Shown in pieces: positions 5,444 to 27,162 of a DNA stretch of 64,000 nt. The position numbers were made by a program, and so were the translations under genes. The stretch's first letter is position 1, and each line of letters begins with the position of its first letter. The notes under the pieces were generated by a model. That model saw only the letters and a list, made by a program, of their open reading frames with translations, was not told the DNA's origin and did not search any database. Origin of the DNA: Lytechinus pictus (taxonomy: Eukaryota); the NCBI RefSeq assembly GCF_037042905.1, contig NC_087255.1:19902001-19966000 (forward strand), in the 5' to 3' direction.

Positions 5444-5444
<1 letters not shown>

Positions 5445-5512: not shown

Positions 5513-5515
<3 letters not shown>

Positions 5516-6512: not shown

Positions 6513-6558
6513 GGCCTATGTAAAGACCTTTTTTGTTAAATCGTTCGCTTTGGCAACA

Positions 6559-7398
6559 ATGGCGTCAATCTGTCCAATAGTTCTTCTTGTGTTTTTTCAG
6601 GTTGTCCAAGGTGGCAAGATCCTGATTTTTAGTGGATACGGTGAGGGCAGTCATTTCATGACTGCTGCTCATGTTGGGAAGGAGTTGATGCGTCGAAACC
6701 ACAACGTCACTCTGCTAATTAGCAATGCGTACGAGCACAGAGCAAACGAAACCAAATACAAGGATTTTAACTTTGAAAAATTCAAGCACAATGTTCCCCC
6801 AGAAGAGGTTCGAGGTCGCCTTGAGCGATTATCAGAGTCGATATTCAAAGGGAACTTCCTGCGGGATGTCCTTTGGAATATGACAGACCTTATGGGTGAG
6901 ATAGTCGATGACTGTGAAGCATTATTCAACGATCAGGTGCTTCTACAAAGACTCCTTGAAGCAAAGTTCGACGTGGCTTTCGTTGATCCCCTATGGCCAT
7001 GTTCGTTGCTTGTTGCCGAGTATGCCGCCAAGAGACATGTGTCCTTTATGGCTACCACATGGAATGACAACATTGCCCGCGTGAATGGCAATCCTTCAAA
7101 TGCTGCCTTTATAGGGGAAATGAACACCGGTTTCACCAATAAGATGACACTGACCGAGCGCGTTGCCAACTGCATCATGATTATGGTCTCAAAATGGATG
7201 GCGACATTTACCAATTCTTATACCCCTATCCAACATGCTCATGGAATTTGTCCAGATCTCAAGGCAGAAGATCTCTACCAACGGTCACAGCTGCTTCTAG
7301 TCAATGTTGATTTCGCATTGGAGTATCCGATTCCAGTCATGCCACATCTGATTCCTGTTGGTGGCCTGTCTACTGGACCTGCAAATGACCTAGCTCAG
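6559..7398 (+). CDS. UGT: UGT variable exon V1 (signal peptide + aglycone-binding domain, 280 codons; 522 aa with constant exons)
   Basis: ATG in gcaacaATGG, hydrophobic leader, GKILIF..GEGSHF motif, FVDP, NVDFALEYPIPVMPHLIPVGGL. Ends CAG|GTTAGT, 840 nt, phase 0. Confidence 0.93.
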
Positions 7399-7861
7399 GT
7401 TAGTATTGCATGATTAGCATATTAGATTGGGCGAAAATGTATTTTTGATATGGAATCGACAACCCTGTTCAATGTTCACACACTGCTTGGAAATCTTTGG
7501 AAATCTGAGTTTGGCCATTAATTTCCAATTTTACACAATGCATATTTGACATCATTCAAAAGATTATTTTTTATCTTTAAAATGATACCATGCTTGTTAT
7601 GATCATGCCATCACGAAAAGAGCAGGATTAAAAAGTGTTGGATGAGGTCTGAATTGAAAAGCTGCAAAACGAGCAGAAATAGTCATGAAGGGTCAATATA
7701 AAGAACATGTTTCTTTTGTCTGTGTCAATAGAGATGAAAATCCATTCAATTCAAGCCCCTGCTTCTTCATTTGTTTATGTTTTGTTGTGGTTTATGTAGT
7801 GATGGTTCTGTAAGATAACATGGTTTGAGTCGTGGTTTGAAATACCCATGCATGTTTGTCT

Positions 7862-9904
7862 GGGGATCAGGACAACTACCCCCCGGACAATTACCCCCGG
7901 ACAACTACCCACGGACAACTACCCCCGGACAATTACCCCCGAGGACAATTACCCCCCCCCGGACAACTACCCCCCGGACAATTACCCTCTGAGGACAATT
8001 ACCCCCCGAGGACAATTACCCCCGGACAATTACCCCCCCGGACAATTACCCCCAGACAATCATCCCTGGACAATTAACCCCGAGGACAATTACCACCGAG
8101 AACAATTACCCCCCCCCCCCAGGACAATAACCCCCTAGATAAAGGGGGTGCACAGAGTCATACGTCGGCCGTACGTTTGACGTAAGAAGTACTCGAGGCA
8201 TTCTCGAGTATCTAGGAATCTAACGAACGCCGTAAGAAAGCTGTAAAAGTGAGCTCCATCTGCAAATCTTTACGAAACCCAGAATTCGATCATAATTTGT
8301 ATGTCACCGTAGCATAAGATCATTCGTTTTGGCAATCTTCGCAGTGGCGTAGTATACGGGGGGCCAGGAGGCACGTGCCCCTCCCTAAAATTTGGTTTGC
8401 CCCCCTAAATAAACTGACGGAGCAAAAAAAGGGGGGAGAAAGAAAGAAAGAAAAAAAAAATAATGAGAAAGATAGAAGAAAAAAGAAGAGGAAAATGAGA
8501 GGAGAAAGAGGAGTGAATAATATAAGGTTAAGGGAAGACTTTTTATGTCACTATATAAAATTTTCGCTCACGCTTCCCGCTCGCATTGCCTTTTCGATGA
8601 GATTCATATCTTGCCCAATATAGGCTGATATGGAGCTTGAAATATCACGTTTTGAAGTCAATATACAAAACAGATTTCATCTCGGATATCGAGCTTTCAT
8701 TATTTTTTTATTTACAAATTGATTTTTTCAAGTGCTCTGTAAAATGTCCGTTTTATGGTCTAAATATTAATATTTATAGCTCACGCTGCTCGGTCGCATT
8801 ATTTGATTTGCATAGGCCTACTTCTTTATAAATTCTTACAAACCGTCCTTAAAATGCACCTTAAACGAATTGTATACTATCATGATTGCCAATTTGTATG
8901 GAAAAAAACACTGTATTTGATTATGTCATATTGTTTACAATTTAGTAATTTTGTTACTTAATTTCCTTCTTTAATGTTTAATTGCTTTCATCCGAGAATA
9001 TAACACACAAAAACACCTTGTAATTTTACCATTTAGAGTCAAATGGTAAAATTACAAGGTGTTCTTGTATTATCTTTGCATAAAGTTTTTTAGCTTACTG
9101 TATTTAGTTATAAAGCCACATCTTAATCTGGAATGTGCACCAATTGTTTCATAATTCTTAGCTTCTTGTTAGTTGAATTGTTTTAGAATAACAGGTTTAT
9201 AGGTCCTTCTTGACAGTGTTAGTGTTGTTAGTTGTGTTATCGACTTTGAATATTTCTACGTATGAAGGTGTCTTTTTTACGTTTTATCTTTTTGCCCGAT
9301 TTCTTTCCTGAAATTAAACCAAAAATAAATTTTAAAATCAGATCAGTTTGAATCAGAGATATTCAGGTTTTGTGATTATTACGACTAATCGACGGTGTTC
9401 AATTGTTCTATGAAAACTTAGTATGAGGGCCAGTTTACACATTTTCTGATGTATATATCCCATATAACCCATAGCCAAATGGGAGGTTTCGGGTGCAAGC
9501 CCCCCCCCCCCCCCCCCCCATTTTTCATGATGCAGAAGGCGCCGCTAAACAAAAACAAAAAAGTAAGAAAAAGGCGGAAAAAGGAAAAAGAAGAAAGTGA
9601 GAGAACAGGAGAAAGAGCAATATAAAAGAGAAAGAAAAAGTTATTAACGTAAGATAAAGTAGAAAATATTTCCAAAACCTGTGCCACCGACCAAAACTTA
9701 CAATGGGTCCCGCTTAATTCTAACATTGATGCCGGAGAGAAGGGTGGATTATCTGGGGGTGATTGTCGGGGGGTAATTGTCCTCGGGGGGGGGGGGGTAG
9801 TTGTCCTCAGGGGGTAATTGTCCGGGGGGTAATTGTACTCGGGGGGGGGGGGGTAATTGTCCGGGGGTAGTTGTCCGGGGGGGGGGGTAATTGTCCTAGA
9901 ACCG
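7862..9904. mobile_element. Foldback-like element with inverted terminal arrays of a ~15-bp unit
   Basis: (GGACAAYTACCCCCC)n at 7869-8137 and its reverse complement at 9748-9897, with matching inner boundaries (ccccctagataa / ttatctggggg). No clean TSD. Confidence 0.75.
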
Positions 9905-10167
9905 TTTGTTTGTTATGTGTTTGATTGTGCAGAGGTGTGTTTGATTCCACGTTAATGTTGATGTTAAGGCGCATGAAAACAAAAGAAACCGCTGAGAAAC
10001 TAACTCATCACCACGGAAAAAATAACTGTGACTTTCAATATTGTGTCATTTTGCAACTTTTGAATTTTGACCTTGCCCCACATTTCAAGGCACTGCACCT
10101 CCATGTGAACCATAATCATATCATGTAGGGTATCATTCAAAAGAAAATTAAATGATCTATTCATTTG

Positions 10168-10316
10168 TAGTGTAGTAGGTTTCACGGTACACCATGTATT
10201 CTTTCTTGGGCATATGTTGGTCCTGAAAAGGACCACCCAATCTTTGGGTGGTCCTTTTCAGGACCAACATATGCCCAAGAAAGAATACATGGTGTACCGT
10301 GAAACCTACTACACTA
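10168..10316. repeat. Perfect palindrome, 73-bp arms with 3-nt loop
   Basis: 10168-10240 is the exact reverse complement of 10244-10316; the loop is TCT. Confidence 0.95.
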
Positions 10317-10453
10317 TTCTTCTTCGCCATGGAAACCTTCAGAAATTATACTATTCATTTGTATTAATCACAAATTGATATTTACTAAAACCGAGGAGAG
10401 ATTATCGATTAAAGTCAGATTTCCAAACTTTTTTTGAGGAGTTTATATGTATA

Positions 10454-10798
10454 TATATGGCGATTCCATGCTAGAAAAATCAGCTTTTCACAACATTTTT
10501 CAACCTGCTGTCCAAACGAACGAAGAACTTTAATTTGCTATGTGGTAATAGGTGAATTAGAGCTTAAAATGTTGCGTGTCGTACGGGACATTTCTGCGTC
10601 CCGTACGACACACAACATTTTCACCTATAATTTACCCATAATCATTTTTTTGTGTTGGTTATTAGTTTTTCACATGACTACCTACTATAGCTTTATCATT
10701 GACAAAAAATAATATTTTATTGCTCAAGCATTTGGCTAGGAAACTAGATATTGTTGTCAAAATGTCCCGTACGACACGTATGGAATCGCCCATATATG
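10454..10798. mobile_element. MITE with TIRs and internal hairpin
   Basis: Ends tatatggcgattccat / atggaatcgcccatata. Internal inverted repeat gtgtcgtacgggac...gtcccgtacgacac. Confidence 0.6.
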
Positions 10799-11713
10799 TA
10801 TACAAATATCTGTAGCGATTATCTATATTACTTCCGAAACCAATAATATCATATATGGTTATTACTACATTAACAATTTCATTAATAATCACATTATCAA
10901 TGATTATAATGATATAAAATAACAAGCATTTCAGGAGGTAGAACAGTATAATAATTATAGTGAATAGCTCCTGCGCTCAATCGATCTACACAATATTCAT
11001 TTTGTTATTATTTGTACACATCGAGGTTTTTACCTGACTGCTAAGAAAGCACGAATGCCTGTGAGCAAGCAACCGGGGGACCAACGGCTTAAGGTCCTCT
11101 CCGAGGGACCTGGTAATGAGGATTATTATCATTATTATAACATTCAAATAATGACAATAAGATTTACATTTATGGAAAGCACATTCATTATAAATACTTT
11201 GCATTATAACATAGACACCCCCGTTCATTTTTTTTTAACAAAGGCTACTCGAAATTGAACAAGAAACCCATTGACATGGTGCACTGAGGCACAATTTGCA
11301 CGCGCCCGTGAATTGGACCGTCAAGCTGATCGATCATCTTTTCTAATACCGTCGTGAAATTTAATCCATACGATTTACAAAAGAAGAATAATGTATGCCC
11401 AATCTTCGGAAAGCCTAGATATTGTACCAATATCGGCTACAATCTAATTCGATACGTGAAAACGTAAAAAGACTCAAGTCTTTTTTTCAATTTTGCTTTG
11501 CCTCATTGAATTGAACGTCACCCTTCACCTCAAAAATCAATGAAGTGTTATGTACATGTCCCGAGGTACACGTGTATGGCAGTTGAATATTAGGTCAACC
11601 GGGTATATGATTTTGTTTTGTAATAACGTAACTGATATTGACATGACCAAAGTCCGCAGCATCGATCAAGCCACAATTAAAGGCTGAAGCGGTTTGAACT
11701 ATAATATGCACAA

Positions 11714-12565
11714 ATGGCTACTCTCTATCCAGTAATAATGGCTGTTCTTGGATTAGGCCTAATAGAAGTATCCTACGGAAGTAACATCTTAATTTTTAGT
11801 GGATATGGCGAAGGAAGTCATTTCATGACTGCAGCTCTAGTTGGAAAAGAGCTGATACGTCGGGGTCATAATGTAACAGTGCTGATTAGCAATGCATACG
11901 AGCACAGGGCAAACGAAACCAAATACAAGGATTTACGCTTTGAAATCTTCAAGCACAATGATCCTCCAGAAGTTGTTCGGAATCGTCAAGAGCATTTTGC
12001 AAAGTCGGTATTCGAGGGAACCGCCATGACAGAATTTTTCATGAACATGTCGATCGTATTGGACTGGTTCGTCGATGATTGCCACGCATTGTTTAATGAC
12101 GAACCCCTTCTAAAAAGACTTCGTCAAGCAAACTTCGACCTGGCTTTCGTTGATCCTGTATGGACGTGTTCGTTGCTTGTTGCGGAATACGCTGCCAAGA
12201 GACATGTTTCCTTCATGGCTACCACATGGATGAACTTCATTCCCCGCGTGACTGGAAACCCTTCAAACACTGCCTTCGTGCCAGAGTGGAGCACCGGTTT
12301 CACAAATAAGATGACATTTGCTCAGAGGGTTATTAACAGTGTCGCCCTCGCGTTTTCGGTGTGGATGACTTCTTCCACTGATTCCACCTCCATTATCCAA
12401 CAAACCCACAGGATTTGTCCGGATCTTCAGCTCTATCAGCTCTACCAAAGGTCTCATCTTCTCCTGGTTAATGTTGATTTCGCCATGGAGTATCCAATCC
12501 CAGTCATGCCTCATGTGATACCAGTTGGTGGTCTGTCTGCGGAACCAGCAAATAATCTTAGTCTG
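11714..12565 (+). CDS. UGT: UGT variable exon V2 (284 codons; 526 aa with constant exons)
   Basis: Intact paralog of V1 (GEGSHF, FVDP). Ends CTG|GTTAGT, 852 nt, phase 0. Confidence 0.93.
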
Positions 12566-14829
12566 GTTAGTATTTTATTATATGGCACTTATACACACAC
12601 CCTCACACGCCCACACATTAGCTTTAAATTTTTAGGCCAATATGGTAGTGAGAGCCTGCAAACACAATAATAGTAATAATGATAATAATAATCTTAAAAA
12701 GAAGAAGAATACCCAATACTTGTAGATACTTCCCATCTTATCCTCAAGGCGCCTTTTCAGAGCAGTTCAGAGAAAGAAAAGACAAAAATTCCATTAGAGG
12801 TTCGACTTCGAACTTTACGTATGAGTACTTTATTGTTGTCTATCACAAGGCACATTTATACAAACCGCGTAGCCAGGAATTAATTTTTGGAGGGGCGGTT
12901 AGGGTAAGTTCACGCAAAGCGTGCCAACACTTGCAGAGCGCTCCCTAATAGGGGGAGCTAGGGTGCAGGGACGGGGAAGTATATTCCCTCCCTGTACTGT
13001 CGTCTCGCTCATATAGCACGGTATATGAAGCAGATACTTGCTAAAATTGCTTGCTGAAAAGTGGAAGAAATAGCATATGCATATGGGGCCTCGGAAATTA
13101 GCGTAGTGTTATAACCCGCTCTGACCAGAAGAACAGATATTTTGTGTCGATGCAATTAAAAAAGTACTTTTAATACTTTACACAAATGCATACTTTATAA
13201 TTTCTGAAAAAAATACACAAGGCCTATAGGAAAAAACGGAATAGAAAAATGGTGTCGAAAACAAATAGGAGAGGCAATTGCGATATTTCCCGCGTGTGGC
13301 GCGGAAGAAAATTTTAAGAGAGTGAAGAAAGTGTCGTTTTTTAATCATTTGGTCAAAAAACAAAACAATAATCTATACCCTAATATTGTTCCCCTTCTTT
13401 CGCTTTTTCAATTTCTCCTTTTTTTTAAGGACGTTTTGGGGGCGAACGCCCCTCTGCCCCCCCCCCCCCACGTCTACGCGCCTACAGTGTCTTCAGATTT
13501 CCCATGAACGTAGGATCTTAAACTTCGTTAGCGTTGGTAGCATTATGAATCAGAGATTTATTGTAACAGGGGGAAGTTCCATTGACAATATGAAAGACCA
13601 AAAGGGGCAACAAGTGAAGACTTTTCAAGACAGGGGTGATGTGACATATACTTACTGGATATAAAGTTACAATGCGCACATCTGCATTTTGTATCTTCTA
13701 CAGTTTCCCAATTTGAAAATCTGGTAAATTATAGGCTATTACCAAAACTGAGCCGCGAAGAAATAAGTGTGTGTGCCAATTTTCATGTTGTTGAGCGACT
13801 GACATATTTACTTATAAAATCCAATGTTGCGCAACTGATTTGATTTGCGACCTGATTTGCGACCTGATTTGCAAAATAATGCTCATTGGACATGGTCATG
13901 GCCGATGATGGGAGTCAAAAACAAAACCAAGGTTGCGACATGAAATTATTGATTTTCGACTAGGAATTGTGTATACTGGAAATGGCATCAATGTCTGAGT
14001 TGATGAGTTAAAATTTAGTTTTCAAGAAAGAACACCATTCTTTGGTGTGTTTTTTATCATCGGATACAGACCCATAATGATAGTTGGATGACGTTGTAAA
14101 TTCAGATGGGTATTATCCGGTAAATGAATGGGGTGATACAAAAATATATTGAGATGATATTTTCAAACACTGGGAGCACTCCAAAACCAATGTGACCATA
14201 TGGTTATTTATGTTAGACTAGTAATGTCTTCCTTGTGCGATGTTTTATTGTGTTGAGATATGAAGTGTTCAAATACTTGAAGCATTGCATTTTACAGCGT
14301 TTATCGTGATCAATGTGCATATTAGCGCGCGAGCGAGTGAACATATTTTCAGGAGTTGGACAATCGCATTTCAAGAATAACGTGAATCAAAATGTCATGT
14401 ATTTCATTGGCACAATTCAAAGGAGGGTTTTGACGAATGGCTGCTATTCTATTTTGCTAAAAGAGAGAGGTTCTATGGTATCAAATGATAGTTTACAATT
14501 AGAAAAAATCCTGTAAATTTATATATTTGTAATATCCTGAAGATTTTTCCACATGTTAACATTGGTACAGATCCATTTAAGCAAATGACAATATAACTGT
14601 CGAAAAATATTTCCGCTTGAGTGAGCACCACTTACTTTTGAAAAGTTAGTGAAAAAAGATTTGCGCAGATCTTTAAAATAGTTATGCGAATAAAAGTAAA
14701 CCTTAATCATGAAGAACACGTGGAATTTAGCTCGTAAAATTGATTTGAAGATATCTTCTACCTTTATTAACTTGTTTCCTTGCCCAAAACACTTCGAAGA
14801 GTGCATTGCACCCCACCCCACTCCCCACA

Positions 14830-15464
14830 CACCGAGGCCATCGTGACGATATTTACTTTACACTGAACTGTGATTTACATGAAACGGCTTAGGCTTGATT
14901 TTTATTTGTTAATTATTGTCAAGCTTGGGTAAAGTGTGGAGAAAAAAGTACTAAATGAAAAATGAAATGTAAACCCACTTTAAATTAGAAGAAATTAGTG
15001 AAGAATGCTGGAGATGTCTGATATAAACTTTTGTTCAGATTCAGTTATGTCCTGATCGAGATCCAGCCTGCACACAAAAAGGGTAAAAGGTTGTGCTTAC
15101 TAAGTGTTGAAATTTCAATTTGGGTGGCAAAATTGTTACAGAATGCTTGAATGTATCCGTTTTATTTCAATTGACTAAAATTGCAAGGGAAATGTATGAG
15201 AAATGTTCCGCAGAGTAAGTTTGATTTCGCCCTTTTCCCTCGACATAGCGTGAAAACGAGCATTTTTGCGCAAACAGATTTCTGCGAGCTTTACAAAAAT
15301 GGACAGGGCTCACTCAAGTGTAGCATTCTGTCAAAACTTTTACTTTCATTGTAAAGATGAGACCCAAACCCAAGAATATATGTGAAAAAAATTACCCACA
15401 TGCTGTATATTTTTTAATTCCCATGGCTTTTTCAATGTGTAAACTTTTTTTTTGATACGCACTG
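14830..15464. mobile_element. Truncated Tc1/mariner-type element upstream of V3
   Basis: Ends ...TTTGATACGCACTG-TA. Left boundary approximate; no partner TIR found. Confidence 0.45.
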
Positions 15465-15672
15465 TATATTCGAACCGCTACATCTCGGGCAAAATGTTTA
15501 GTGTATGTCTGTCGCACACACGAGTCTAGCCATATTTTTGACATTATTGTGAGTAATCGGTTCATTGTATGATTATCAACATATCTTTATGAGGTCAAAT
15601 ATTTGCATTATCGGTGTACGCGGGTTTATGCACTTCCCGCTGGTATCAGAATGAGCACGAACTGTTGCAACA

Positions 15673-16515
15673 ATGGCTGCTCTCACAATTATTGTTCTTC
15701 TGCTTGGATTTCTACAAGTCTCTCGAGGAAGCAATGTTCTGATTTTTAGTGGCTACGGTGAAGGAAGTCATTTTATGTCTGCTGCTCTTGTTGGAAAGGA
15801 GCTTATGCGTCGTGGCCATAATGTCACTGCAATAATAAGCAATGCTTACGAGTACAGAGCAAACGAATCCAGATACAAGGATTTCAACTTTGAAATATTT
15901 AAGCACAATGTTCCTCCTGAGGAAGTTCGGCTCCGCCGAGAGCGTTCCAAAGAGTCGATATTTAATAGAACCTTATACAAGGAGGTCAATTTCGTCAGAT
16001 CATCCATAATGAATCGACTTCTTGATGATTGCCAAGCGTTGTTCGATGACAAGCCACTTCTACGAAGACTCCTGCAAGCAAAGTTCGATGTTGCTTTCAT
16101 TAATCCTATTTGGCCGTGCTCGTTGCTTGTTGCTGAGTATGCCGCCAAGAGACACGTGTCCTTTATGGCTACCACTTGGATGAACAACGTTCCTCGCTTG
16201 AATGGAAATCCTTCAAACACTGCCTTCGTTCCAGAGTGGAGCACTGGTTTCACGAATAAAATGACATTTATCCAGAGGGTTATCAACAACTTTGCAGCCA
16301 TGCTTTCGGTATGGATAACTTCTTCTTCTGATTCTCACACCGCTATCCAACATGCTAACGGGATATGCCCTGATCTTTGGACCTCGCAGCTTTACCAGAG
16401 GTCACAACTGCTTCTGCTTAATGTGGATTTCGCTCTAGAGTTTCCGGTCCCAGTCATGCCACATCTAATACCGGTTGGTGGCCTGTCTACTGGACCAGCA
16501 GATGATTTAAGTAAG
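15673..16515 (+). CDS. UGT: UGT variable exon V3 (281 codons; 523 aa with constant exons)
   Basis: Intact paralog. Ends AAG|GTCAGT, 843 nt, phase 0. Has FINP where the others have F(V/I)DP. Confidence 0.92.
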
Positions 16516-18664
16516 GTCAGTATTGTACAGTAAGATCGTGTACAAGAACACGAAGAGAATGTGATAACTCTACAAAGCACATAAAGAGCCTTACACTTTT
16601 TCAAGAAGAATTATATATTTTTTTTTTTTTTTTTTTGGGGGGGGTGTCACAGGTCGATATTTTTCTGTGACGTAAATGACTGCATACTTAAAGGGGCGCT
16701 GGACTTAGATCACAGTGGATCTCCTGTTTAAGGTTAATACATTTATCATTTCGTCATAAATACGCCTAGAAATGATATCTAAAGCTGATGAAACGTTAAA
16801 ATTAATTCAGAACTCTAAATAACTCTAATTAAGAACAGTGCCGCATAACATGTATTCGGTCGTGAATACATGGACGATGTATTATATCTCAACGTCATTG
16901 GTAAGGCAAATGACATCAGTAACTCAATTATCACTTTTATTGAAACCTGGGGAACTTAACATTTCTTATATACCGACCACTCTTCCTAAAGGTTGCTAAG
17001 ATAAGATAACCGCCATTAGTTGCGCCAGTGTAGGCCTATCTGAAGCACGTATCGATTGTATTCAAGTAATAATTGGTCCAAGGTATACAATTATAAAAAC
17101 ACACCAGTTATAAAATATTTTCACAATCAATGTACGTGGGTTTACGCACGTTTCCAATGATATCACACTATCCATTGCAATGGCTGTTTTCACGTTTACT
17201 GTTCTTCTGCTTGGATTTCTACAAGTCCCTCGGGGAAGCAATGTTCTGATTTTTAGTGGATACGGTGAAGGAAGTCATTTTATGTCTGCTGCTCTTGTTG
17301 GAAAGGAGCTTATGCGTCGTGACCATAATATCACTGCATTAATAAGCAATGCTTACGAGTACAGAGCAAATGAAACCAAGTACATTGATTTAAAGTTTGA
17401 AATCTTCAAGCACAATGTTCCTCCTGAGGAAGTTCGGGTTCGTCATGAGCGTTTCACAGAGTCAATATTCAGAGGAACCTGGTTGAGGGATATCCTTTTG
17501 AACGCTACAACCATAATGAATTGGTTTATCGACGATTGCCAGGCGTTGTTCGATGACAAGCCACTTCTACAACGACTCCTTGAAGCTAAGTTTGACGTGG
17601 CTTTCATTGATCCTTTATGGCCATGCTCGTTGCTTGTTGCTGAATACTCGGCCAAGAGACATGTGTCCTTTATGGCTACCACATGGATGAACAACGTTCC
17701 CAGCGTGAATGGAAATCCTTCCAACGCTGCCTTCGTGCCAGAGGGTAATAATGGCTTCACAAATCACATGACTTTGATCCAGCGGGCTCTGAACTGTATC
17801 ATGGGCATGGTCAATAAATGGACATTGAAGATGAGTGATTCGCACACCGCTCTCCAACATGCTAACGGGATATATGCCCAGATCTTCGGACCTCGCAGCT
17901 TTACTAGAGGTCACAACTTATTCTGCTTAACGTGGATTTCGCTCTAGAGTTTCCGGTCCCAGTTATGCCACATCTAATACCCGTTGGTGGCCTGTCTACT
18001 GGACCAGTAGATGATTTAAGCAAGGTCAGTATTGGACAGTAAGATCGTGTACAAGTACGCGAAGATCAAGGCACATAAAGAGCCTTACACTTTTCAAGAA
18101 GAATTTATTTTGGGGGCGGGGGTTGTCACATGTCGATATTTTCCTGTGACGTAAATGACTGAATACTAAAAGGGGCACTGGACTTAGATCACAGTGGATC
18201 TTTTGTTAATAAAGGTTAATACATCTATCATTTCGTCATAAATACGCCTAGAAATAATATTTAAAGCTGATGAAACTTTAAAATTAATTCAGACTCTAAA
18301 TAACTCAAAATAAGAACAGTGCCGCATGACATGTATCCTGTCGTGAATATATGGACGATATATTATATTTCACGTCATTGGTAAGACAAATTGCATCAGT
18401 AACTCAATTATCACTTTCATTGAAACCTGGGGAACTTAACATTTCCTATATACCGACCACTCTTCCTAAAGGTTGCTAAGATAAGATAACCGCCATTAGT
18501 TGCGCCAGTGTAGGCCTATCTGAAGCACGTATATCGATTGTATGCAAGTAATAATTGGTCCAAGGTATACAATTATAAAAACACACCAGTTATAAAATAT
18601 TTTCACAATCAGTGTACGTGGGTTTACGCACGTTTCCATTGATATCACACTATCCATTGCAACA
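16516..18664. repeat. Duplicated inter-cassette spacers of the ~1.5-kb UGT tandem unit
   Basis: 16516-17179 and 18025-18664 are highly similar along their length; a third diverged partial copy lies at 20010-20390. Confidence 0.9.
17180..18024 (+). pseudogene. UGT: UGT variable exon V4, disabled
   Basis: 845 nt (843+2). Extra TA at ~17871-17874 (gggatatatgccc vs gggatatgccc) and CAG>TAG at 17905-17907 in the ancestral frame. Donor AAG|GTCAGT retained. Confidence 0.88.
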
Positions 18665-19512
18665 ATGGCTGTTTTCACGTTTACTGTTCTTCTGTTTGGA
18701 TTTCTACAAGTCTCTCGAGGATGCAATGTTCTGATTTTTAGTGGATACGGTGAAGGAAGTCATTTTATGTCTGCTGCTCTTGTTGGAAAGGAGCTTATGC
18801 GTCGTGGCCATAGTGTCACTGCATTAATAAGCAATGCTTACGAGTACAGAGCAAACGAATCCAGATACAAGGATTTCAACTTTGAAATATTCAAGCACAA
18901 TGTTCCTCCTGATGAAGTTCGGCTCCGCCGAGAGCGTTCCAAAGAGTCGGTATTCAATAGAACCTTATACAAGGAGGTCAATTTCGTCAGATCATCCATA
19001 ATGAATCGACTTCTCGATGATTGCCAAGCGTTGTTCGATGACAAGCCACTTCTACGAAGACTCCTGCAAGCAAAGTTCGATGTGGCTTTTATTAATCCTA
19101 TTTGGCCGTGCTCGTTGCTTGTTGCCGAGTATGCCGCCAAGATCAGAGACACGTGTCCTTTATGGCTACCACTTGGATGAACAACGTTCCCCGCTTGAAT
19201 GGAAATCCTTCAAACACTGCCTTCGTTCCAGAGTGGAGCACTGGTTTCACGAATAAAATGACATTTATCCAGAGGGTTATCAACAACTTTGCAGCCATGA
19301 TTTCGGTATGGATAACTTCTTCTTCTGATTCTCACACCGCTATCCAACATGCTAACGGGATATGCCCTGATCTTCGTACCTCGCAGCTTTACCAGAGGTC
19401 ACAACTGCTTCTGCTTAATGTGGATTTCGCTCTAGAGTTTCCCGTCCCAGTCATGCCACATCTAATACTGGTTGGTGGCCTGTCTACTGGACCAGCAGAT
19501 TATTTAAGCAAG
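18665..19512 (+). pseudogene. UGT: UGT variable exon V5, frameshifted near-copy of V3
   Basis: 848 nt (843+5). ATCAG inserted at ~19142-19146 (aag-atcag-agacac vs aagagacac). Donor AAG|GTTAGT retained. Confidence 0.85.
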
Positions 19513-19524
19513 GTTAGTATTGTA

Positions 19525-19992: not shown

Positions 19993-20389
19993 TGTGTATA
20001 TCAAGAAACGTGTTAACAGGTGGATATTTTCCTGTGACGTAGATGACTGAATACTAAAAGGGACACTGAACTGAGATCACAGTGGATCTCGTGTCAAAGT
20101 TTATTTATCTTTTTGTTATAAATACATGAACTAAGAAATAATATTCAAAGCTCATGAAAATTTCAGAACTCTAAATAAGAGCAGTTGAAATGTCGATGAG
20201 GTTGTTTAATTTGTATATAGATAAATGTTCTTTATTTATCGTATAACATGTATTAGGTCGTGAAATATGGATGATAAACTATATCATATTTCAACGTCAT
20301 TGGTAAGAAAAATGACATCAGTAACTCAATTATCATTTTCACTGAAACATGGGGAACTTAACATTTCTTAAATACCGACCAGCCCCTCT

Positions 20390-20533
20390 TCATCCGCACC
20401 TCTCAGCTTGACCAAAGGTCACAACTGCTTCTGGTTAAATATTGCTTTCGCATTAGAGTTTCCAATTCCAGTCATGCCGCATCTGATACTGGTTGGTGGC
20501 CTGTCTACTGGACCATCAAACAGTCTTCCTCTG
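20390..20533 (+). pseudogene. UGT: UGT variable exon V6, 3' remnant only
   Basis: Encodes FALEFPIPVMPHLILVGGLSTGPSNSLPL then CTG|GTCAG. Directly fused to a copy of the inter-cassette spacer (20010-20390), so the start and ~700 nt of exon are deleted. Confidence 0.85.
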
Positions 20534-22537
20534 GTCAGCTTTTCATTTTTAGGTGTTTCTCTCCATTTGAACCACGTAACATTCATAACGTTTTCGCAAC
20601 ATCCTTCCATTGCATTCAATGTTTTGCAGTTACGTAGGGAAATGAATTAAACCACGGAAATATAAATTTTATACATAAAACTAATCACCCCCCTTAAGAA
20701 TTATACCGGATTGTAAATATTAAAAGGATTTGTGCATTAATGGGAAGGAGAGAATGAGGTGTCACAATTTAATCTATTTATTTGCAGCCACATAAAGTTC
20801 GTGTCAATTCAGAAGGCGCAGAGACATAAGACGTCTCAGTTCAGAATATCGCAGACAGCTGCAGGGGATGGGGGATGTGTGGCTTTTTAACATTCCAATA
20901 TAACATCTGTGACCTATTGCAGAAAAATATTACAATTAAACACAACGCGATCTAAATATCACACGTGTCGTGATTTTTAACCAATCGAAAGCGCGCATTC
21001 TGGACTTGCGAATGAAGTTAAAACGCAATGAGCTCCAGCGAGCAAGCAAAATGTCATCTTTATTACAAAATCCAAGTTTGTGATAGATTTTGACATAATT
21101 TTCAGAAATAATCATATTTCACCTTTATCCCTTTTTTTTGGGGGGGTGGTTGGTCATATTTTCGTTTTTTTAATTATCAAGACAACTCGTTCTAAAATAT
21201 ATATATCCACTTAATCAATACGAATCTCATTCGTAATTAAGTTTATGCAGGGTTCATGTATCTTATTATGACGACAGCCCGTTCTAAAATATATATTCAC
21301 TTCATTAACAGAAATTCCATTCGTACTATAGTCAAGTCCACCCTTATATACAAAAGTTTCTTAAATAAAAAGAGAAAAATAAAGAGCATAAAACTGAAAT
21401 ATTCAGTATCGACATCGGATGTTAGTTCAGTAATTTATGCTTGCTTTTCTTGAAAATATAATGCACAAAACAACGAAATGCAAATGAGGGAATCTGGATG
21501 ATACCGCTCTTCTATATATCGTTATCTGAATTATACACTATCTCTCTTTTTCTTTCCTTCTTTTTTTACAGATTTAACCATAACGAGACACTTCATCAAA
21601 ATGTTTACTTCGTTGCGATTTCACAGGTTCACGAAAGAATCAAACTTTATTTCACATCATGGTGAGGAGAAAACAAAAATATTTGTAATTCATCTGATAA
21701 AAATGCAAAGATATAGTGAGTGGATGACATCGTAGATTCCCTCATTTGCATACCGAGCGACCAGAAAGTGCATGCCTGTTTTGTGAAAATGAGCGAAACT
21801 TTCTCATTTAACATCTGACTTGGATGAGATTTTCAGTGTTAGTTATGAGCTCGTTTGATATTTTTATTTAAAAAAAATGAAATAAAAATCTGCTGTTTTA
21901 GGGGGTGGGTTCTTGCATGGACTTGCCCTTTAAGGATAAAATATAATATATTGTACATCATATTTTTAATAAGTTTCAATCCATCACTATAATCATGATA
22001 AGGGAAATGAACGTACATACGTTATTAAAGGTGTTTAAAACACGTGGGACTTAATAAGCTCAACCATTGTTTGCTATTCAAGATGCTGTAGAGGCTTTAA
22101 ACTGTTGAGCACACATTACGAACGTATACGTGCACCTTCAAAGCATTAAAGATTCATTTACATTACAATGACTTCTTTTTTCATTCACGCCATTGTCCAG
22201 TGAATCGGAATTTCTCTCTGTAAATACACCGATTCTTCTGCATGTGCTGACCCTTATCCTTCAAGAGGCGCAGTTGTGTGGGGGTTTTCGGTTTCTTTCC
22301 CCTTTCTCTCTCATGCATCACACTCTTCTGGTTTTGGTTGTGAAAGAATAATTAAGTGAAGGTATAATAGTGATTTATTTCCCTTGATGATGATGATAGC
22401 TGACAGGAGGAGTATTTGACTAGGAGCATCTGTACATTGGTTGCCTACGTTCTTGCCGTGATAAACGATATACATGTACATGGTTTAATTATCTTGGAGA
22501 ATTGAAATGCAAGATCAGTGGCTTAACTGGAGTAGAA

Positions 22538-23428
22538 ATGGATAGAACTGGATCTAGATCTCTGCGAAATAACTTTTCTTACCTCATATTTGTGACCCTG
22601 ATTGTCCTTCCACGAAGGGGATACTTCTGCGATGGTGCTAATATCTTTGTATTCGCCTCGTACGGAGAAGGAAGTCGCTTTATGGCGCCTGCTAGCATTG
22701 CTGCAGAACTCACAAACAGGGGTCACAACGTCACAGCTCTGATCAGCAACGCTTATAGCTACCGACAGGACGACGAACTGTATAAGAATATTTCTTTCGA
22801 AATCTTCACGCACAAGGTCCCTCTCGACGTCGTTAAAGAGCGTCAGCTCCGTATTCCACGAGCAGCCTTTGACAAGTCGACTTCATGGAAGTTCGACTTC
22901 GTGAGGAAAATCAACAAAATTGCAGCGGAGCACATCGAGGATTGCGAAGCCATTCTCGATGACAAGGAACTTGTCAAGCGGCTGCTCGATCGTGAGTTCG
23001 ACCTCGCAATCATCGACCAGTTCTGGCCGTGTTCGATGATCTTGGCCGAGCACGTTGCTCGTGGGCATGTCGCCATGATGCCGACAGCCTGGATGAATGC
23101 GATCGCACGCCTAAATGGAAACCCTACCATTTTCGCAATCGTCCCTGAGGTCAACACCGGGTTATCCCCGCAAATGACATTCAGACAGAGAATCAAGAAT
23201 TTCTTTCATTCATTCCTTGTCTCTTTCTCCAAGTGGGCAGTTAATAAACTCACACCTGTAATGAGAAAGTATGACATCTGCCCAGGATATTACCCATCCG
23301 ACCTCTATCAACGAGCTCAGCTGGTAATATCCAATGTCGATTTCGCTGTAGATTTTCCTATTGCTACCCAACCGCATATCATTACTGTTGGTGGATTAAC
23401 AACTAGACCTTCAAAGTCATTGTCTCAG
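22538..23428 (+). CDS. UGT: UGT variable exon V7, divergent (297 codons; 539 aa with constant exons)
   Basis: Intact ORF with GANIFVF..GEGSRF, IIDQFWPC and NVDFAVDFP. Ends ...SLSQ CAG|GTAATT, 891 nt, phase 0. Confidence 0.9.
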
Positions 23429-23806
23429 GTAATTCCCAACTAAAGGACATCTAACAAGAACATTTATATTGCTAACATGATCAGTCCATGAAATTTTCAT
23501 CATTCTGCGCAAAAGCCACATTTCAACAGCTTATATAGAATTCTATACATAAACAAGAAAACAACTTAATAATAACGTTCTGCAATATCTTAATATACTA
23601 TTAAAGCATTACCAAATTTTAAAGGTTTTGCATTAGTCATCATCCTAGAAAACACCACATGACAATCTTACTATCCCGTTATTTGCTCTGAAGTTTAATA
23701 TGCTTAAGCATAAGTACACACAATGGCAAAGCTCGTTTTTACGGGCGCGGGTTCAGAAGGGACACAGATATAGGGTGCATCTTCGGCCATGAGCCACAGC
23801 TCCCTT

Positions 23807-23960
23807 ATACCTCGGTCACATTTGCTCTACGGCGAGTCAAAAACAGCCGTTCAATATACAAACCACCCATATTATGTATTATGTAGCTCGTACATAAAAT
23901 GTTAAAACGGCTGTTTTCGACTCGCCGTACGGCCGCCGTAGAGCAAATGTGACCAAGGTA
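23807..23960. mobile_element. Short MITE
   Basis: TIRs tacctcggtcacatttgctctacggc / gccgtagagcaaatgtgaccaaggta. Confidence 0.75.
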
Positions 23961-24148
23961 TTACTTTAAAAATCCTGGACCAAACAACAAACAGAAACAA
24001 AAAGGCATTATCTAGATTTTTTAGCTTCCCTAGTGTTCCCTTCAACATATGTTCAACGTACGTTTTCTTGGGCGCAGGCTATGTTGGTGTAGTTAGTTTT
24101 GAAGTGATAACAATAGGGTGCTATGACCTATTACCGTTGCCCCCCCCC

Positions 24149-24182
<34 letters not shown>

Positions 24183-24861
24183 AGAAGATTATGATGTTGA
24201 ACAGAAGAAGGAGATGATGTATTACACAGGAAGAACGCTGTTTAAAATTTTATTCAACGCTGTTTATTATATGAATTTCACAGTAGTTGTTACAGTTTAA
24301 ACAACTATGCTTAATTTATTGAGAATTAAAATGAAAATTTAACTTCGTTGTTTGGGTTTTTTAAACAATTATTGTCAGGTTCATATGGTAAACAGCTTTG
24401 CAGATGTTTTTTTACTGCGTATATAATCAAAATACGTAAAGGTCTACCTCTACAGAAAATATAATACTTACGTTTTCCTTTCGTTGGTATATTGACCCCA
24501 TTGTAGATTTTTAAACATTCTTAGCTTAAGCACGATTGATGTGCAAATTGTTAGATCTGACGACTCCCCTAGAGTTTGATTGGCTCCGAAGTTCCTGTGA
24601 TAACTGTCGGATAAAACATCCGACAAATCCTGTCATGAAACGCTTCCCAGCTTGATAATACTATACAAACATGTATTTTTATCAATGACGAGGATAGTAA
24701 CAAATTATGAGAATATGGTATGTCCCGAATCTTTCCATATTGCAGGCTTCTTGTTTTGTTTTTGTATTTTACTTTATAAGTTATGTTTCCTACGCTTAAC
24801 CATTACTATGCAAATATTATGTTGACGATGTTTTGTATCTCTCTCTCTCTCTCTATTTCAG

Positions 24862-25087
24862 GAATTAGAAGAGTATGTCCAGAGTTCCGGGGATGACGGG
24901 ATCATCATCTTCTCGCTTGGGACCTATGTGACGTACATGAAGGAGGAGCTCATCGCTGTCTTTGCCAATGCCTTCGCGCGACTTCCGCAGAAAGTCATAT
25001 GGCAGTTCAAAGGGACACCACCGGCTGTTGTTACCAAGGTGCCCAATATAAAGACCATGGAGTGGTTACCTCAAAATGACTTGCTTG
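24862..25087 (+). CDS. UGT: UGT constant exon C1
   Basis: (CT)n tract then tttcAG|GAA. ELEEYVQSSGDDGIIIFSLGT...WLPQNDLL(G). Donor G|GTAAGG. 226 nt, phase 0 to 1. Confidence 0.95.
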
Positions 25088-25194
25088 GTAAGGACAAGCT
25101 TCTGTTTCAGGGTCCATCAGTGGTAGGAGTACTAGTATGTGGTGGTGCCGTTATGAATAGTAGTAAAGTGAGTGGTATAATTAATATTAGAAGT

Positions 25195-25224
25195 AAAGTA
25201 GCAGCAGGAGTAGTAGTAGAGGGA

Positions 25225-25261
<37 letters not shown>

Positions 25262-25363
25262 CAGTGGTAGTGTAGCTATAGTAGTACAGTGAGTGGTATA
25301 CTTAGTAGTAGCAGTAGAAGCAGCAGCATCAGCAATAGTAGTAGGCCTAAAAATGGAACTAGT

Positions 25364-25399
<36 letters not shown>

Positions 25400-25443
25400 G
25401 TAGTAGTAGTATATAGTAGTAGTAGTAGTAGTTGTTGTTGTAG
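25195..25443. repeat. (GTA)n/(CTA)n trinucleotide microsatellite in the C1-C2 intron
   Basis: Directly visible. Confidence 0.9.
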
Positions 25444-25691
25444 TTTCAGAGCAGAACAAAATAAAGCGTACTTGCGTCCCGTTGCTTAAATTTAGGCAAG
25501 TCATGTGCAAGGTCAACCAAAGCATTAATAATAATAATAGTCTCATGAAAGTCACAAATGCGCGCCACTGATTTGTTGCGTTTAATTGTGAACGTTTTCT
25601 TTCTGTGATTCTTTGTAATACTGCCTTTTAGTAAAAGAATATTTCATTAGATATCATGCCATTATATATTCTCCATTTTTTACTGCCACAG

Positions 25692-25911
25692 GCCACAACA
25701 AAACCCGGGCGTTAATGTACCAAGGGGGCAATAACGGTCTCTACGAGGCGCTTTATCACGCCGTACCCATCGTGGTCATACCCTTGATCGGCGACCAGCC
25801 CGACGTCGCAGCTCGGGTGACGAGTAGAGGCATGGGTCTCAAGCTCGACATCAAGACCATTACCTCAGAGAAGATCGTTGACGCCCTCAATGCTGTCATC
25901 CATGAGAAACA
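25692..25911 (+). CDS. UGT: UGT constant exon C2 (UGT signature, UDP-sugar binding)
   Basis: cacAG|GC. GHNKTRALMYQGGNNGLYEALYHAVPIVVIPLIGDQ. Donor CA|GTGAGT. 220 nt, phase 1 to 2. Confidence 0.95.
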
Positions 25912-26879
25912 GTGAGTATCTTGAGCAGAAACATGGGGGCTAGACGCTATCCCCCCTCCCATTTTACACACATCGCGGGGAAAAGACGTCGTTCTTCGTT
26001 TTCTACTTTTCTAGCCTTTTTACCCCTCATCTGTCGTTTTCTGAAATTCCGCTGTAAGACCATGAAACTTGCTTGATCTTTCAAAAGTCTTTCAATGAAC
26101 TTTCAAAGATCCCCGAGGTCTTATATGATTACTGTTTGATTGTTCAGTGGTCTTCGTGGTCTCCGTGATCTCAAAGACTTTTTTGAAACTTTTTGAAACA
26201 GTCCTTCAGCGTTCTTGCAGGAAAGTGGTCTTTTAGTGGTCTTTCAGCGGTCTCTTGATCGATGAACTTTCAAAGTTCTCATTAGTCTCTCCATGATCTT
26301 TCAATAGTCTCTCATTTTTTTAGGGGATATCTCTGAAAGTCAGTCTTTCAGAATTCATGTAGGGGTCTAGGTGAGTCTTCCAGAGGTCTTGGTTAGTTTT
26401 TTCAGAGAAGTCGATCAATCTTTCAACAATCTCTGGCAGTACGCCATATAATCATTCAGTGATTCCTTAGTGGTATTTCCTGCTGGAAATATTGTTTTTG
26501 GTTTTTATGTTATTTATTTTATTGATATATTCATATTTCAATTTTCAGGGATTTTTCAGAGCCATTCCATAGAGATCCCAAATTTCAGTGATCTCGGAGA
26601 CTGCTAAAAGACCTTGCCAAATTATGGTATTTCAGTAGTCTTTCAATGGTCCCTTTCTATGGAATGGGGGCCTGACTAAAATGATTTTCAAGCAAGAGAT
26701 TACTTGGTTTTCTTGAGGGGGAGGGGTGAAGAAAAGCAAGATTGAATTTAGGAAAGGAAAAATCATTTCTCTCTTGTAATACTAAGTGTTGTTTGTTGGG
26801 GATGTGCTCTCATGATTTTTTTGCATGTGGTTAGTAAGTATGCCTGTCATAATTACATTTTAATTTCTCATAATTCCAG

Positions 26880-27162
26880 ATACAAAGAAACGGTGCAACA
26901 GCTGTCCGCCATTTTCCACGACCGCCCGATGAGACCAGTCGAAAAAGCCGCATTTTGGATCGAACACGTGATCAAACACGGTGGTGAATACATGCGATCA
27001 CCTATTCATGACTTAACGTGGTATGAGTATTACCTCATCGACGTCGCCGCCTTCTTCCTTCTCGTGATTGTCGTGCTTGTCGTTTTTATTGTGTATTCAT
27101 GTAAATTTGCCTTCAGGTGCTGCAAGAGAGTTTGTGTCGGCAAGAAAGCAAAGACTGAATGA
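26880..27162 (+). CDS. UGT: UGT constant exon C3 (TM helix, dilysine ER-retention tail)
   Basis: ttccAG|A. YKETVQQLSAIFHDRP..AAFWIEHV..LTWYEYYLIDV, hydrophobic TM, ends KKAKTE-TGA. Phases sum correctly. Confidence 0.95.

What the first reader, a model, noticed from the sequence alone, without database searches (positions are those of the whole stretch)
6559..27162. UGT1A-style variable/constant exon-sharing locus in an apparently invertebrate genome
Seen: four intact and three disabled exon-1 cassettes all end at the same donor position, phase 0 in the intact ones (7398, 12565, 16515, 18024, 19512, 20533, 23428). I found no C-terminal UGT exons between them, and a single constant set starts at a phase-0 acceptor at 24862. 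Each intact cassette has its own ATG and signal peptide, and V1, V2 and V4 have no usable acceptor just upstream. Established: vertebrate UGT1A and the clustered protocadherins use promoter choice plus splicing of one variable first exon to shared constant exons. Inference: this locus makes at least four enzymes (522, 526, 523, 539 aa) with different acceptor pockets on one UDP-sugar-binding/TM module. I know of no description of this in echinoderms. It could be ancestral to deuterostomes or convergent. More cassettes could lie left of the window.
Basis: partly seen in the sequence, partly recalled or inferred. Interest (0 to 1): 0.92.

Follow-up and report, generated by a model that had tools for sequence, protein, structure and literature searches.

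The report
Sea urchin UGT exon-sharing gene cluster
This sea-urchin (Lytechinus pictus) locus really does carry seven alternative first exons in front of one shared set of three constant exons of a detoxification enzyme (UGT). That is the layout of the human UGT1A locus, it arose independently here, and it is already implicit in RefSeq isoform models of related urchins and amphioxus.

Summary
There are seven tandem UGT N-terminal cassettes: V1, V2, V3 and V7 are intact, V4 and V5 are frameshifted, and V6 is a fragment. Each ends at a phase-0 GT donor. The window holds only one constant set (C1 24862-25087, C2 25692-25911, C3 26880-27162). The joined products are 522, 526, 523 and 539 aa.

The genome is Lytechinus pictus. 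RNA-seq reads show V7->C1->C2->C3 directly. I did not see a V1-V3->C1 junction, but four lines of evidence support it:
- In two runs the constant exons are much deeper than V7 (21.8 vs 0; 50.9 vs 5.7), and V1-V3 words are present in those runs.
- Their constant-exon contigs stop exactly at the C1 acceptor.
- V1-V3 have dN/dS of 0.20-0.33, like V7.
- L. variegatus RefSeq joins the V1 orthologue to the same constant exons (522 aa).

The S. purpuratus orthologous locus has four nested products with one shared 3' end. L. pictus has at least two more such clusters. Amphioxus has a 4V:1C cluster.

Intron positions match mammalian UGT1A, but the V exons group by lineage. So the exon structure is ancestral and the arrays look convergent.

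I found no paper describing this; a 2007 paper calls the organisation vertebrate-specific. It is a new member of a known kind, of moderate interest.

The parts
6559..7398 (+). Variable first exon V1. It is intact and encodes 280 aa: ATG, a hydrophobic signal-like N-terminus and the UGT acceptor-binding domain. It ends at a phase-0 GT donor. A TATATAAA box lies at 6505, 54 nt upstream of the ATG.
   Evidence: It is 95% identical in protein to the L. variegatus exon that RefSeq isoform X2 joins to the constant exons. dN/dS is 0.33.
11714..12565 (+). Variable first exon V2, intact, 284 aa, ending at a phase-0 GT donor.
   Evidence: dN/dS is 0.20 against the L. variegatus orthologue, which carries a 1-nt insertion. 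RefSeq XP_054765162.2 uses this donor but splices it to a mini-exon at 14989.
14989..15021 (+). Small exon ('KKLVKNAGDV', then a stop) that the L. pictus RefSeq V2 model joins to the V2 donor. Its acceptor is weak (AG preceded by only 50% pyrimidines).
15673..16515 (+). Variable first exon V3, intact, 281 aa, ending at a phase-0 GT donor.
   Evidence: dN/dS is 0.27 against L. variegatus cassette 26232-27074.
17180..18024 (+). Pseudo-cassette V4. It has a 2-nt insertion and a CAG>TAG change. The GT donor is retained.
   Evidence: Its orthologue in L. variegatus lies at L009 21741-22550.
18665..19512 (+). Pseudo-cassette V5, a recent copy of V3 with a 5-nt insertion (AGATC) that shifts the frame. 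The GT donor is retained.
20317..20533 (+). Cassette fragment V6: only the 3' end of a V exon, still followed by a GT donor.
22538..23428 (+). Variable first exon V7, the one nearest the constant exons. It is intact, 297 aa, and 42-46% identical to V1-V3. Its 5' UTR starts at about 22220-22300.
   Evidence: RNA depth begins at about 22300 and a contig starts at 22220. The joint 23428->24862 is carried by 16 and 21 reads. It equals residues 1-297 of RefSeq XP_054765166.2.
24862..25087 (+). Constant exon C1 (phase 0 in, phase 1 out). It corresponds to mammalian UGT1A exons 2 and 3 together.
   Evidence: (joint to C2).
25692..25911 (+). Constant exon C2, 220 nt. It carries the UDP-sugar signature region (GHNKTRALMYQGGNNG...GDQ) and corresponds to UGT1A exon 4.
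26880..27162 (+). Constant exon C3: transmembrane helix, C-terminal KAKTE (a KXKXX-type tail) and the TGA stop. The 3' UTR continues past 27300.
   Evidence: The contig covering it runs over the end of the stretch that was laid.

Best explanation
This is a multiple-variable-first-exon ('variable/constant') UDP-glycosyltransferase locus of the sea urchin Lytechinus pictus.

Four intact first exons (V1, V2, V3, V7) each supply an ATG, a signal sequence and the aglycone-binding N-terminal half of the enzyme. One downstream set of three exons (C1-C3) supplies the UDP-sugar-binding half, the membrane anchor and a KXKXX tail. Transcription starts at one cassette. Its phase-0 donor is spliced to the single phase-0 acceptor of C1, and all cassettes in between are skipped because they have no usable acceptor. 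The locus would then yield four ER-membrane enzymes of 522, 526, 523 and 539 aa with different acceptor pockets on a common donor module. V4, V5 and V6 are decayed cassettes left by birth-and-death turnover.

Shown:
- the anatomy of the locus;
- the V7->C1->C2->C3 splices;
- expression of the constant exons far above V7 in some samples;
- purifying selection on V1-V3;
- the same architecture, with annotated isoforms, in L. variegatus and S. purpuratus.

Inferred:
- direct V1/V2/V3->C1 splicing in L. pictus;
- one promoter per cassette;
- the enzymes' substrates and sugar donor.
For: Anatomy:
- Seven cassettes and one constant set.

RNA evidence:
- The joints 23428->24862, 25087->25692 and 25911->26880 are all GT..AG. 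They are carried by 16/21, 6/19 and 18/22 reads in runs X19/X20, and by contigs in X1 and X17.
- In X1 the constant exons have depth 21.8 and V7 has depth 0.
- In X17 the constant exons have depth 50.9 and V7 has 5.7.
- In both runs the constant-exon contig stops at 24861, the C1 acceptor, as expected at a branch point in the assembly graph.
- The same runs hold 0.23-0.39 of the sampled words of window 6520-16519. The V1-V3 exons make up 0.25 of that stretch.

Selection, L. pictus against L. variegatus:
- dN/dS is 0.33 for V1, 0.20 for V2, 0.27 for V3, 0.28 for V7 and 0.06 for the constant exons.

Related species:
- L. variegatus RefSeq isoform X2 (522 aa) is the V1 orthologue joined to the same C-terminus as isoform X1 (539 aa, V7 type).
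- S. purpuratus has four products of 524, 531, 522 and 583 aa with nested starts and one common end. Its locus has four V exons and one C1-C3 set.
- The donkey UGT1A locus, used as a control, gives the same nested pattern in the same tool.

Cassette starts:
- No strong acceptor and an in-frame stop upstream of each ATG.
- TATA-like boxes upstream of V1, V4 and V5.
Against: - No read or contig joining V1, V2 or V3 to C1 in L. pictus was actually seen.
- L. pictus RefSeq models V1 and V3 as stand-alone 284- and 286-aa products that read through into the intron. It models V2 as spliced to a mini-exon at 14989, not to C1.
- The argument from where the contigs stop is indirect.
- No TSS data exist for V1-V3.
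- The L. variegatus V2 orthologue carries a 1-nt insertion.
Confidence: 0.85

Rival explanations
1. Only V7 plus C1-C3 is a working gene. V1-V3 are stand-alone truncated genes, or 'short-form' transcripts that end in the adjacent intron, as the L. pictus RefSeq models have them. They make no full-length enzyme.
For: - RefSeq XP_054765161.1 is V1 plus 'VSIA' and a stop. XP_054765163.1 is V3 plus 'VSIVQ' and a stop. XP_054765162.2 is V2 joined to the mini-exon at 14989.
- In runs X19 and X20 the V7->C1 junction reads (16; 21) account for essentially all of the constant-exon junction reads.
- Short-form variable-exon cDNAs are known from zebrafish Ugt clusters (PMC2819257).
Against: - In X1 the constant exons are expressed with V7 at zero. 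In X17 they are about 9 times deeper than V7. V1-V3 words are present in both runs.
- dN/dS of V1-V3 is 0.20-0.33, the same as for V7. A lone N-terminal half has no UDP-sugar site and no membrane anchor.
- The V1 orthologue is joined to the constant exons in L. variegatus RefSeq. All four cassettes are joined in S. purpuratus.
Confidence: 0.1
2. Assembly artefact. Each cassette really has its own constant exons, and these were collapsed or lost in this assembly.
For: Tandem repeats are prone to collapse. The C14 array of near-identical 2.57-kb units shows that such arrays exist in this genome.
Against: - There are no N runs in 6559-27162.
- The cassettes are 42-68% identical in protein, so they are not collapsible copies.
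- Two independently assembled genomes have the same many-V, one-C layout with conserved flanking genes.
- In Diadema, where related genes are whole-gene duplicates, the constant exons are plainly visible.
Confidence: 0.02
3. The variable/constant array is ancestral to deuterostomes. It would be orthologous in organisation to vertebrate UGT1A, not convergent with it.
For: - The V|C1, C1|C2 and C2|C3 intron positions and the phase-0 boundary match donkey UGT1A exons 1|2, 3|4 and 4|5.
- Amphioxus also has four V exons in front of one three-exon constant set.
- Diadema has another nested cluster.
Against: - In the V-domain tree the echinoid cassettes nest inside echinoid-only clades, and the chordate sequences group apart.
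- L. pictus has at least three separate clusters, each with its own constant exons.
- The closest Diadema relatives are whole-gene duplicates. The sea cucumber and hemichordate loci examined are single genes.
- Within vertebrates the organisation is gained and lost by lineage (PMC2819257).
Confidence: 0.1

Closest known systems
Vertebrate UGT1A locus (multiple variable first exons and shared constant exons). Donkey locus L013 was used here as a control.
   Same: - A tandem array of first exons of about 285 aa, each with an ATG, a signal peptide and the acceptor domain.
- A phase-0 donor at the same alignment column (...Q|E[FL]E..Y).
- A single constant set encoding the UDP-sugar domain, the transmembrane helix and a KXKXX tail.
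- Pseudo-cassettes interspersed among intact ones.
- V exons evolving faster than the constant exons.

   Different: - Three constant exons, not four: C1 equals exons 2 and 3 together.
- A compact locus of about 21 kb, against 67 kb or more for the donkey locus.
- The V exons are not orthologous to vertebrate ones.
- Promoter choice has not been demonstrated.
- The sugar donor is unknown.
Zebrafish Ugt1a/1b and Ugt2a/2b variable/constant clusters (PMC2819257)
   Same: Compact clusters that arose in one lineage by tandem duplication of the first exon. Short-form transcripts of the variable exons have been reported there. The truncated RefSeq models of V1-V3 may reflect the same thing.
   Different: A different phylum. 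The zebrafish isoforms were cloned as cDNAs. Here only the V7 isoform is supported by reads.
RefSeq isoform sets of the orthologous urchin genes: S. purpuratus 'UDP-glucuronosyltransferase 2C1' (XP_030852173/4/5) and L. variegatus '2C1-like' X1/X2 (XP_041476122/3)
   Same: The same locus with the same flanking genes, the same exon boundaries and an identical shared C-terminus among isoforms.
   Different: Cassette numbers differ: 4 in S. purpuratus, 6 in L. variegatus and 7 in L. pictus. The V3/V5 duplication is specific to L. pictus. In L. pictus RefSeq splits the locus into short genes.
Clustered protocadherins
   Same: The same logic: a variable first exon joined to shared constant exons.
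   Different: An unrelated protein family. Their stochastic promoter choice driven by CTCF and enhancer contacts is not implied here.

Membership tests
UDP-glycosyltransferase, animal ER type (Pfam PF00201 UDPGT) | An N-terminal acceptor domain and a C-terminal UDP-sugar domain that together cover the whole profile | tested here: met
   The V exons match profile positions 2-263 (E 3.6e-33 and 2.9e-26). C1, C2 and C3 match positions 264-336, 338-409 and 411-493.
UDP-glycosyltransferase, animal ER type (Pfam PF00201 UDPGT) | Signal peptide, C-terminal transmembrane helix and a dilysine-type tail | tested here: inconclusive
   A hydrophobic N-terminus is visible in each V exon. C3 shows the hydrophobic run VAAFFLLVIVVLVVFIVY and ends in KAKTE. 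These were read by eye; no predictor was run.
UDP-glycosyltransferase, animal ER type (Pfam PF00201 UDPGT) | Glycosyl transfer to small lipophilic acceptors | not testable with these tools
   This needs an enzyme assay. The sugar donor (glucuronic acid, glucose or another) is unknown.
Multiple-variable-first-exon (variable/constant) cluster of the UGT1A/Pcdh type | A tandem array of similar first exons followed by a single constant set | tested here: met
   Seven cassettes and one C1-C3 set. There are no C-type exons between the cassettes even at E<=10.
Multiple-variable-first-exon (variable/constant) cluster of the UGT1A/Pcdh type | Each variable exon is spliced directly to the first constant exon | tested here: inconclusive
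   Met for V7, with 16 and 21 junction reads. For V1-V3 the support is indirect: constant-exon depth far above V7, contigs that break at the acceptor, and the L. variegatus X2 and S. purpuratus isoform models. No junction read was seen.
Multiple-variable-first-exon (variable/constant) cluster of the UGT1A/Pcdh type | Each variable exon has its own promoter or TSS | tested here: inconclusive
   V7 coverage begins at about 22220-22300 with no upstream joint listed. V7 is absent from X1 and present in X19, X20 and X17, which shows separate regulation. TATA-like boxes lie upstream of V1, V4 and V5 only. There are no CAGE or 5'RACE data.
Multiple-variable-first-exon (variable/constant) cluster of the UGT1A/Pcdh type | Variable exons lack an upstream acceptor, so they cannot be internal exons | tested here: met
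   No AG with a pyrimidine tract of 75% or more adjoins any ATG. The few candidates lie about 180-195 nt upstream. An in-frame stop lies upstream of every ATG. This was a simple scan, not a trained splice-site model.
Orthologue of the vertebrate UGT1 cluster | V exons and constant exons group with vertebrate UGT1 in a tree | tested here: not met
   In the V-domain tree the cassettes lie in an echinoid clade (support 98/97). Vertebrate UGT1 and UGT2 group together (98/93), with amphioxus as their sister (98/94). Only the intron positions are shared.

The most novel reading that the evidence does not exclude
The first-exon array may not be a vertebrate invention. It could be an old, recurrently renewed deuterostome way of diversifying UGTs. 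On this reading the ancestral deuterostome UGT locus already had several alternative first exons on one constant module. Birth-and-death turnover then erased orthology, so that urchin, amphioxus and vertebrate arrays only look independent.
Probability: 0.1. Interest if true: 0.7.

Novelty: new member of a known kind. Interest (0 to 1): 0.5.

Why it matters
The variable/constant organisation of UGT genes has been described as vertebrate-specific (PMC1885805). This locus and its counterparts show the same solution in invertebrate deuterostomes, on the same ancestral phase-0 intron. The counterparts are the S. purpuratus and L. variegatus orthologues, other L. pictus clusters, a Diadema cluster and a 4V:1C amphioxus locus.

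That makes UGTs a good case for studying how an intron placed at a domain boundary repeatedly leads to exon-array diversification of a chemical-defence enzyme.

On the practical side, it shows that L. pictus RefSeq splits this gene into truncated models. UGT counts in urchin 'defensome' surveys will depend on whether cassettes or genes are counted.

Tried and rejected
- Direct junction test. A MITE-like repeat at 23800-23965 filled the table and 147 rows were hidden. The junctions were therefore not seen.
- Protein databases. Searches with V1, with the V7+C protein and with a paralogue found no L. pictus protein joining V1-V3 to the constant exons, and no Logan-derived protein spanning the junction.
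- More cassettes to the left. None were found in 20 kb.
- Constant-exon relics between the cassettes. None were found.
- Rfam on 21301-27300. Only sub-threshold hits in a low-complexity (GTT)n run, taken as chance. No tRNAs were found.
- Literature. Seven searches found no description of UGT exon sharing in invertebrates. A Spodoptera paper (PMC9209448) concerns ordinary alternative splicing, not a first-exon array. The 2006 urchin defensome paper is not held, so this point remains unchecked.
- Earlier notes of this scan. None lie near this place. Two notes on other UGT loci of this genome did not bear on this reading.

Full report
**1. What is in the sequence**

ORF listing and tblastn show seven tandem copies of the N-terminal half of a UDP-glycosyltransferase on the + strand.

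| Cassette | Coordinates | State |
|---|---|---|
| V1 | 6559-7398 | intact, 280 aa |
| V2 | 11714-12565 | intact, 284 aa |
| V3 | 15673-16515 | intact, 281 aa |
| V4 | 17180-18024 | disabled |
| V5 | 18665-19512 | disabled |
| V6 | 20317-20533 | fragment |
| V7 | 22538-23428 | intact, 297 aa |

- Each cassette is followed at the homologous codon by a GT donor. The intact ones end in phase 0.
- V4 carries a 2-nt insertion and a CAG>TAG change. V5 is a near-copy of V3 with a 5-nt insertion.
- The C-terminal half is encoded once, by C1 24862-25087, C2 25692-25911 and C3 26880-27162.
- A tblastn of these 242 residues against the whole window at E<=10 finds nothing else.
- There is no assembly gap in the locus.
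- Pfam UDPGT is covered end to end: positions 2-263 by the V exons and 264-493 by C1-C3.
- Every ATG has an in-frame stop upstream and no convincing acceptor next to it.
- V1, V4 and V5 have TATA-like boxes 54-91 nt upstream.
- V1-V3 are 65-68% identical to each other and 42-46% identical to V7.

**2. Whose genome**

The window is C11:19902001-19966000 of an 812-Mb assembly. The 539-aa V7+C product is identical to RefSeq XP_054765166.2 of Lytechinus pictus. That protein lies on a contig of 35,715,200 bases, the length of C11.

**3. RNA evidence**

Two raw, stranded RNA-seq runs (X19, X20) and two sets of Logan contigs (X1, X17) were laid on 21301-27300. The three introns appear as GT..AG joints:

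| Joint | Reads in X19 | Reads in X20 |
|---|---|---|
| 23428->24862 (V7->C1) | 16 | 21 |
| 25087->25692 (C1->C2) | 6 | 19 |
| 25911->26880 (C2->C3) | 18 | 22 |

- Contigs in X1 and X17 carry the constant-exon joints. One X17 contig also carries the V7->C1 joint.
- Strand counts show that the RNA comes from the + strand.
- In X19 and X20, V7 supplies essentially all of the constant-exon transcripts.
- In X1 the constant exons stand at depth 21.8 and V7 at zero. In X17 they stand at 50.9 against 5.7. Most constant-exon transcripts in those samples must therefore begin elsewhere.
- In both runs the spliced constant contig stops exactly at 24861, one base before C1.
- The cassettes share only the final G before the junction: CAG in V1 and V7, CTG in V2 and V6, AAG in V3-V5. 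A stop at that base is what a de Bruijn assembly does when several different exons, one of them ending in CTG, flow into C1. This step is an inference.
- The same runs hold 0.23-0.39 of the sampled words of 6520-16519. The three V exons make up 0.25 of that stretch.
- I did not see a V1, V2 or V3->C1 junction read. A repeat crowded out the loose-end table, and no further laying call was allowed.

**4. Evidence from relatives**

- L. variegatus RefSeq has two isoforms of one gene. X1 (539 aa) is the V7 type. X2 (522 aa) has an N-terminus 95% identical to V1. Their C-termini are identical.
- The L. variegatus locus (L009) has six cassettes, all orthologous to L. pictus ones, and one C1-C3 set.
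- The S. purpuratus orthologous locus (L010) has four V exons and one constant set. It has four annotated products (524, 531, 522 and 583 aa) with nested starts and one common end.
- The same tool gives the same nested picture for the donkey UGT1A locus, used as a positive control.
- Between the two Lytechinus species, dN/dS is 0.33, 0.20 and 0.27 for V1, V2 and V3, 0.28 for V7 and 0.06 for the constant exons. V1-V3 are therefore under the same purifying selection as the cassette that is demonstrably used. The variable half evolves about 4-5 times faster than the constant half, as in vertebrate UGT1.
- L. pictus RefSeq, by contrast, models V1 and V3 as 284- and 286-aa products that read into the intron. 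It models V2 as spliced to a 33-nt exon at 14989.
- These models may be an annotation split. They may also reflect real 'short-form' transcripts like those cloned from zebrafish Ugt clusters (PMC2819257).

**5. How general it is**

- Searching the L. pictus genome gives at least 75 V-type matches against 49 C1-type matches.
- On C3 (79.72-79.74 Mb), four intact V exons and some fragments precede one constant set. RefSeq isoforms X1 and X3 use different V exons with the same constant exons.
- On C14 (14.404-14.430 Mb), ten near-identical cassettes with a 2.57-kb period precede one constant set. They keep a K|GT boundary at the homologous place.
- Diadema antillarum has another nested cluster. 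Its closest relatives of the window's genes, however, are two complete four-exon genes in tandem.
- In Branchiostoma floridae, four V exons precede one three-exon constant set, with two RefSeq isoforms.
- The one sea cucumber locus and the one hemichordate locus examined are single genes.

**6. Ancestral or convergent**

- In a protein alignment the urchin V|C1 boundary (..LAQ|ELEEY..) falls in the same column as the donkey UGT1A exon 1|2 boundary (..LPQ|EFEAY..), and both are phase 0.
- C1 equals exons 2 and 3 together. C2 (220 nt) equals exon 4. C3 equals exon 5.
- The four-exon scaffold, with an intron exactly between the two Rossmann-like halves, is therefore shared by urchins, amphioxus and mammals.
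- The V-domain tree puts all cassettes of this locus in an echinoid-only clade.
- Two lineages of cassettes, the V7 type and the V1-V6 type, both predate the Lytechinus/Strongylocentrotus split.
- A single-V paralogue on C8 nests beside the V1-V6 group. Chordate sequences group apart.
- Several clusters within L. pictus have their own constant exons. Within vertebrates the organisation is known to be gained and lost.
- Taken together, the arrays are best read as independent products of first-exon duplication on a shared gene structure. Birth-and-death turnover means that an older origin cannot be excluded. I give it about 0.1.

**7. Known or new**

- The kind of system is well known in vertebrates.
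- The urchin and amphioxus cases are already implicit in RefSeq isoform sets.
- Seven full-text searches found no paper describing them.
- Li, Zhang and Wu 2007 state that these organisations are vertebrate-specific (PMC1885805).
- I could not read the 2006 urchin defensome paper.

**Verdict**

The mechanism is familiar, its recurrence within vertebrates was already known, and the gene models already exist in databases.

Noticed in passing
G000:C14:14404102-14430430 (loci L001-L003), minus strand: Ten near-identical UGT first-exon cassettes repeat every 2.57 kb. Nine have long open frames and one is truncated. They lie upstream of a single constant set and belong to a different UGT subfamily, about 25% identical to V1. 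It may be a very young exon array or a partly collapsed or expanded repeat.
   Followed up: partly
G000:C3:79717001-79739133 (loci L006-L008), minus strand: A second variable/constant UGT cluster: four intact V exons and some fragments in front of one constant set. L. pictus RefSeq isoforms X1 (P0170) and X3 (P0190) use different V exons and the same constant exons.
   Followed up: yes
L012 (Branchiostoma floridae CM022890.1) 961-12667: Amphioxus has four tandem UGT first exons (72-100% identical) followed by one three-exon constant set. The intron positions are the same as in the urchin, and two RefSeq isoforms share one 3' end.
   Followed up: partly
L016 (Diadema antillarum) 1-21368; L011 10001-24697: One Diadema UGT locus shows nested products with a common end, which indicates exon sharing. 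The closest Diadema relatives of the window's genes are instead two complete four-exon genes in tandem.
   Followed up: partly
window 6559-16533 and 14989-15021: L. pictus RefSeq splits this locus into truncated genes. XP_054765161.1 is V1 read through by 4 codons. XP_054765163.1 is V3 read through by 5 codons. XP_054765162.2 is V2 spliced to a 33-nt exon at 14989. This is either a mis-annotation or real short-form transcripts.
   Followed up: partly
window 23800-23965: A MITE-like inverted repeat in the V7-C1 intron (arms ...GGTCACATTTGCTCTACGGCGAGTC... / ...GACTCGCCGTACGG...AGAGCAAATGTGACC...). Depth in RNA contigs reaches the thousands, reads come from both strands and there are many loose ends. 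It is a multi-copy transcribed element.
   Followed up: no
L009 13273-14125 (L. variegatus): The L. variegatus orthologue of V2 has a single-base insertion relative to L. pictus, yet dN/dS is 0.20. This is either a very recent loss or a sequencing error.
   Followed up: no
window 25190-25290 and 25352-25464: A (GTT)n-type microsatellite in the C1-C2 intron gives a poly-Val ORF and sub-threshold Rfam miRNA and leader hits. These look like chance matches.
   Followed up: yes
window 38979-39281 (-), 39642-39774, 45040-48956 (+): A CUB-domain exon lies on the minus strand downstream. This is syntenic with the CUB/lectin gene that flanks the L. variegatus and S. purpuratus loci. The window's only N gap is at 39642-39774. 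Exons resembling a NEK-type protein kinase lie further right.
   Followed up: no
G000:C8:38735523-38748632 and C8:28029924-28033019: These are the two closest paralogues (V 60% and C1 77% identical). Each shows one V and one C1. In the V tree this type sits beside the V1-V6 group and inside the cluster's diversity. It was probably spun off from the array.
   Followed up: partly
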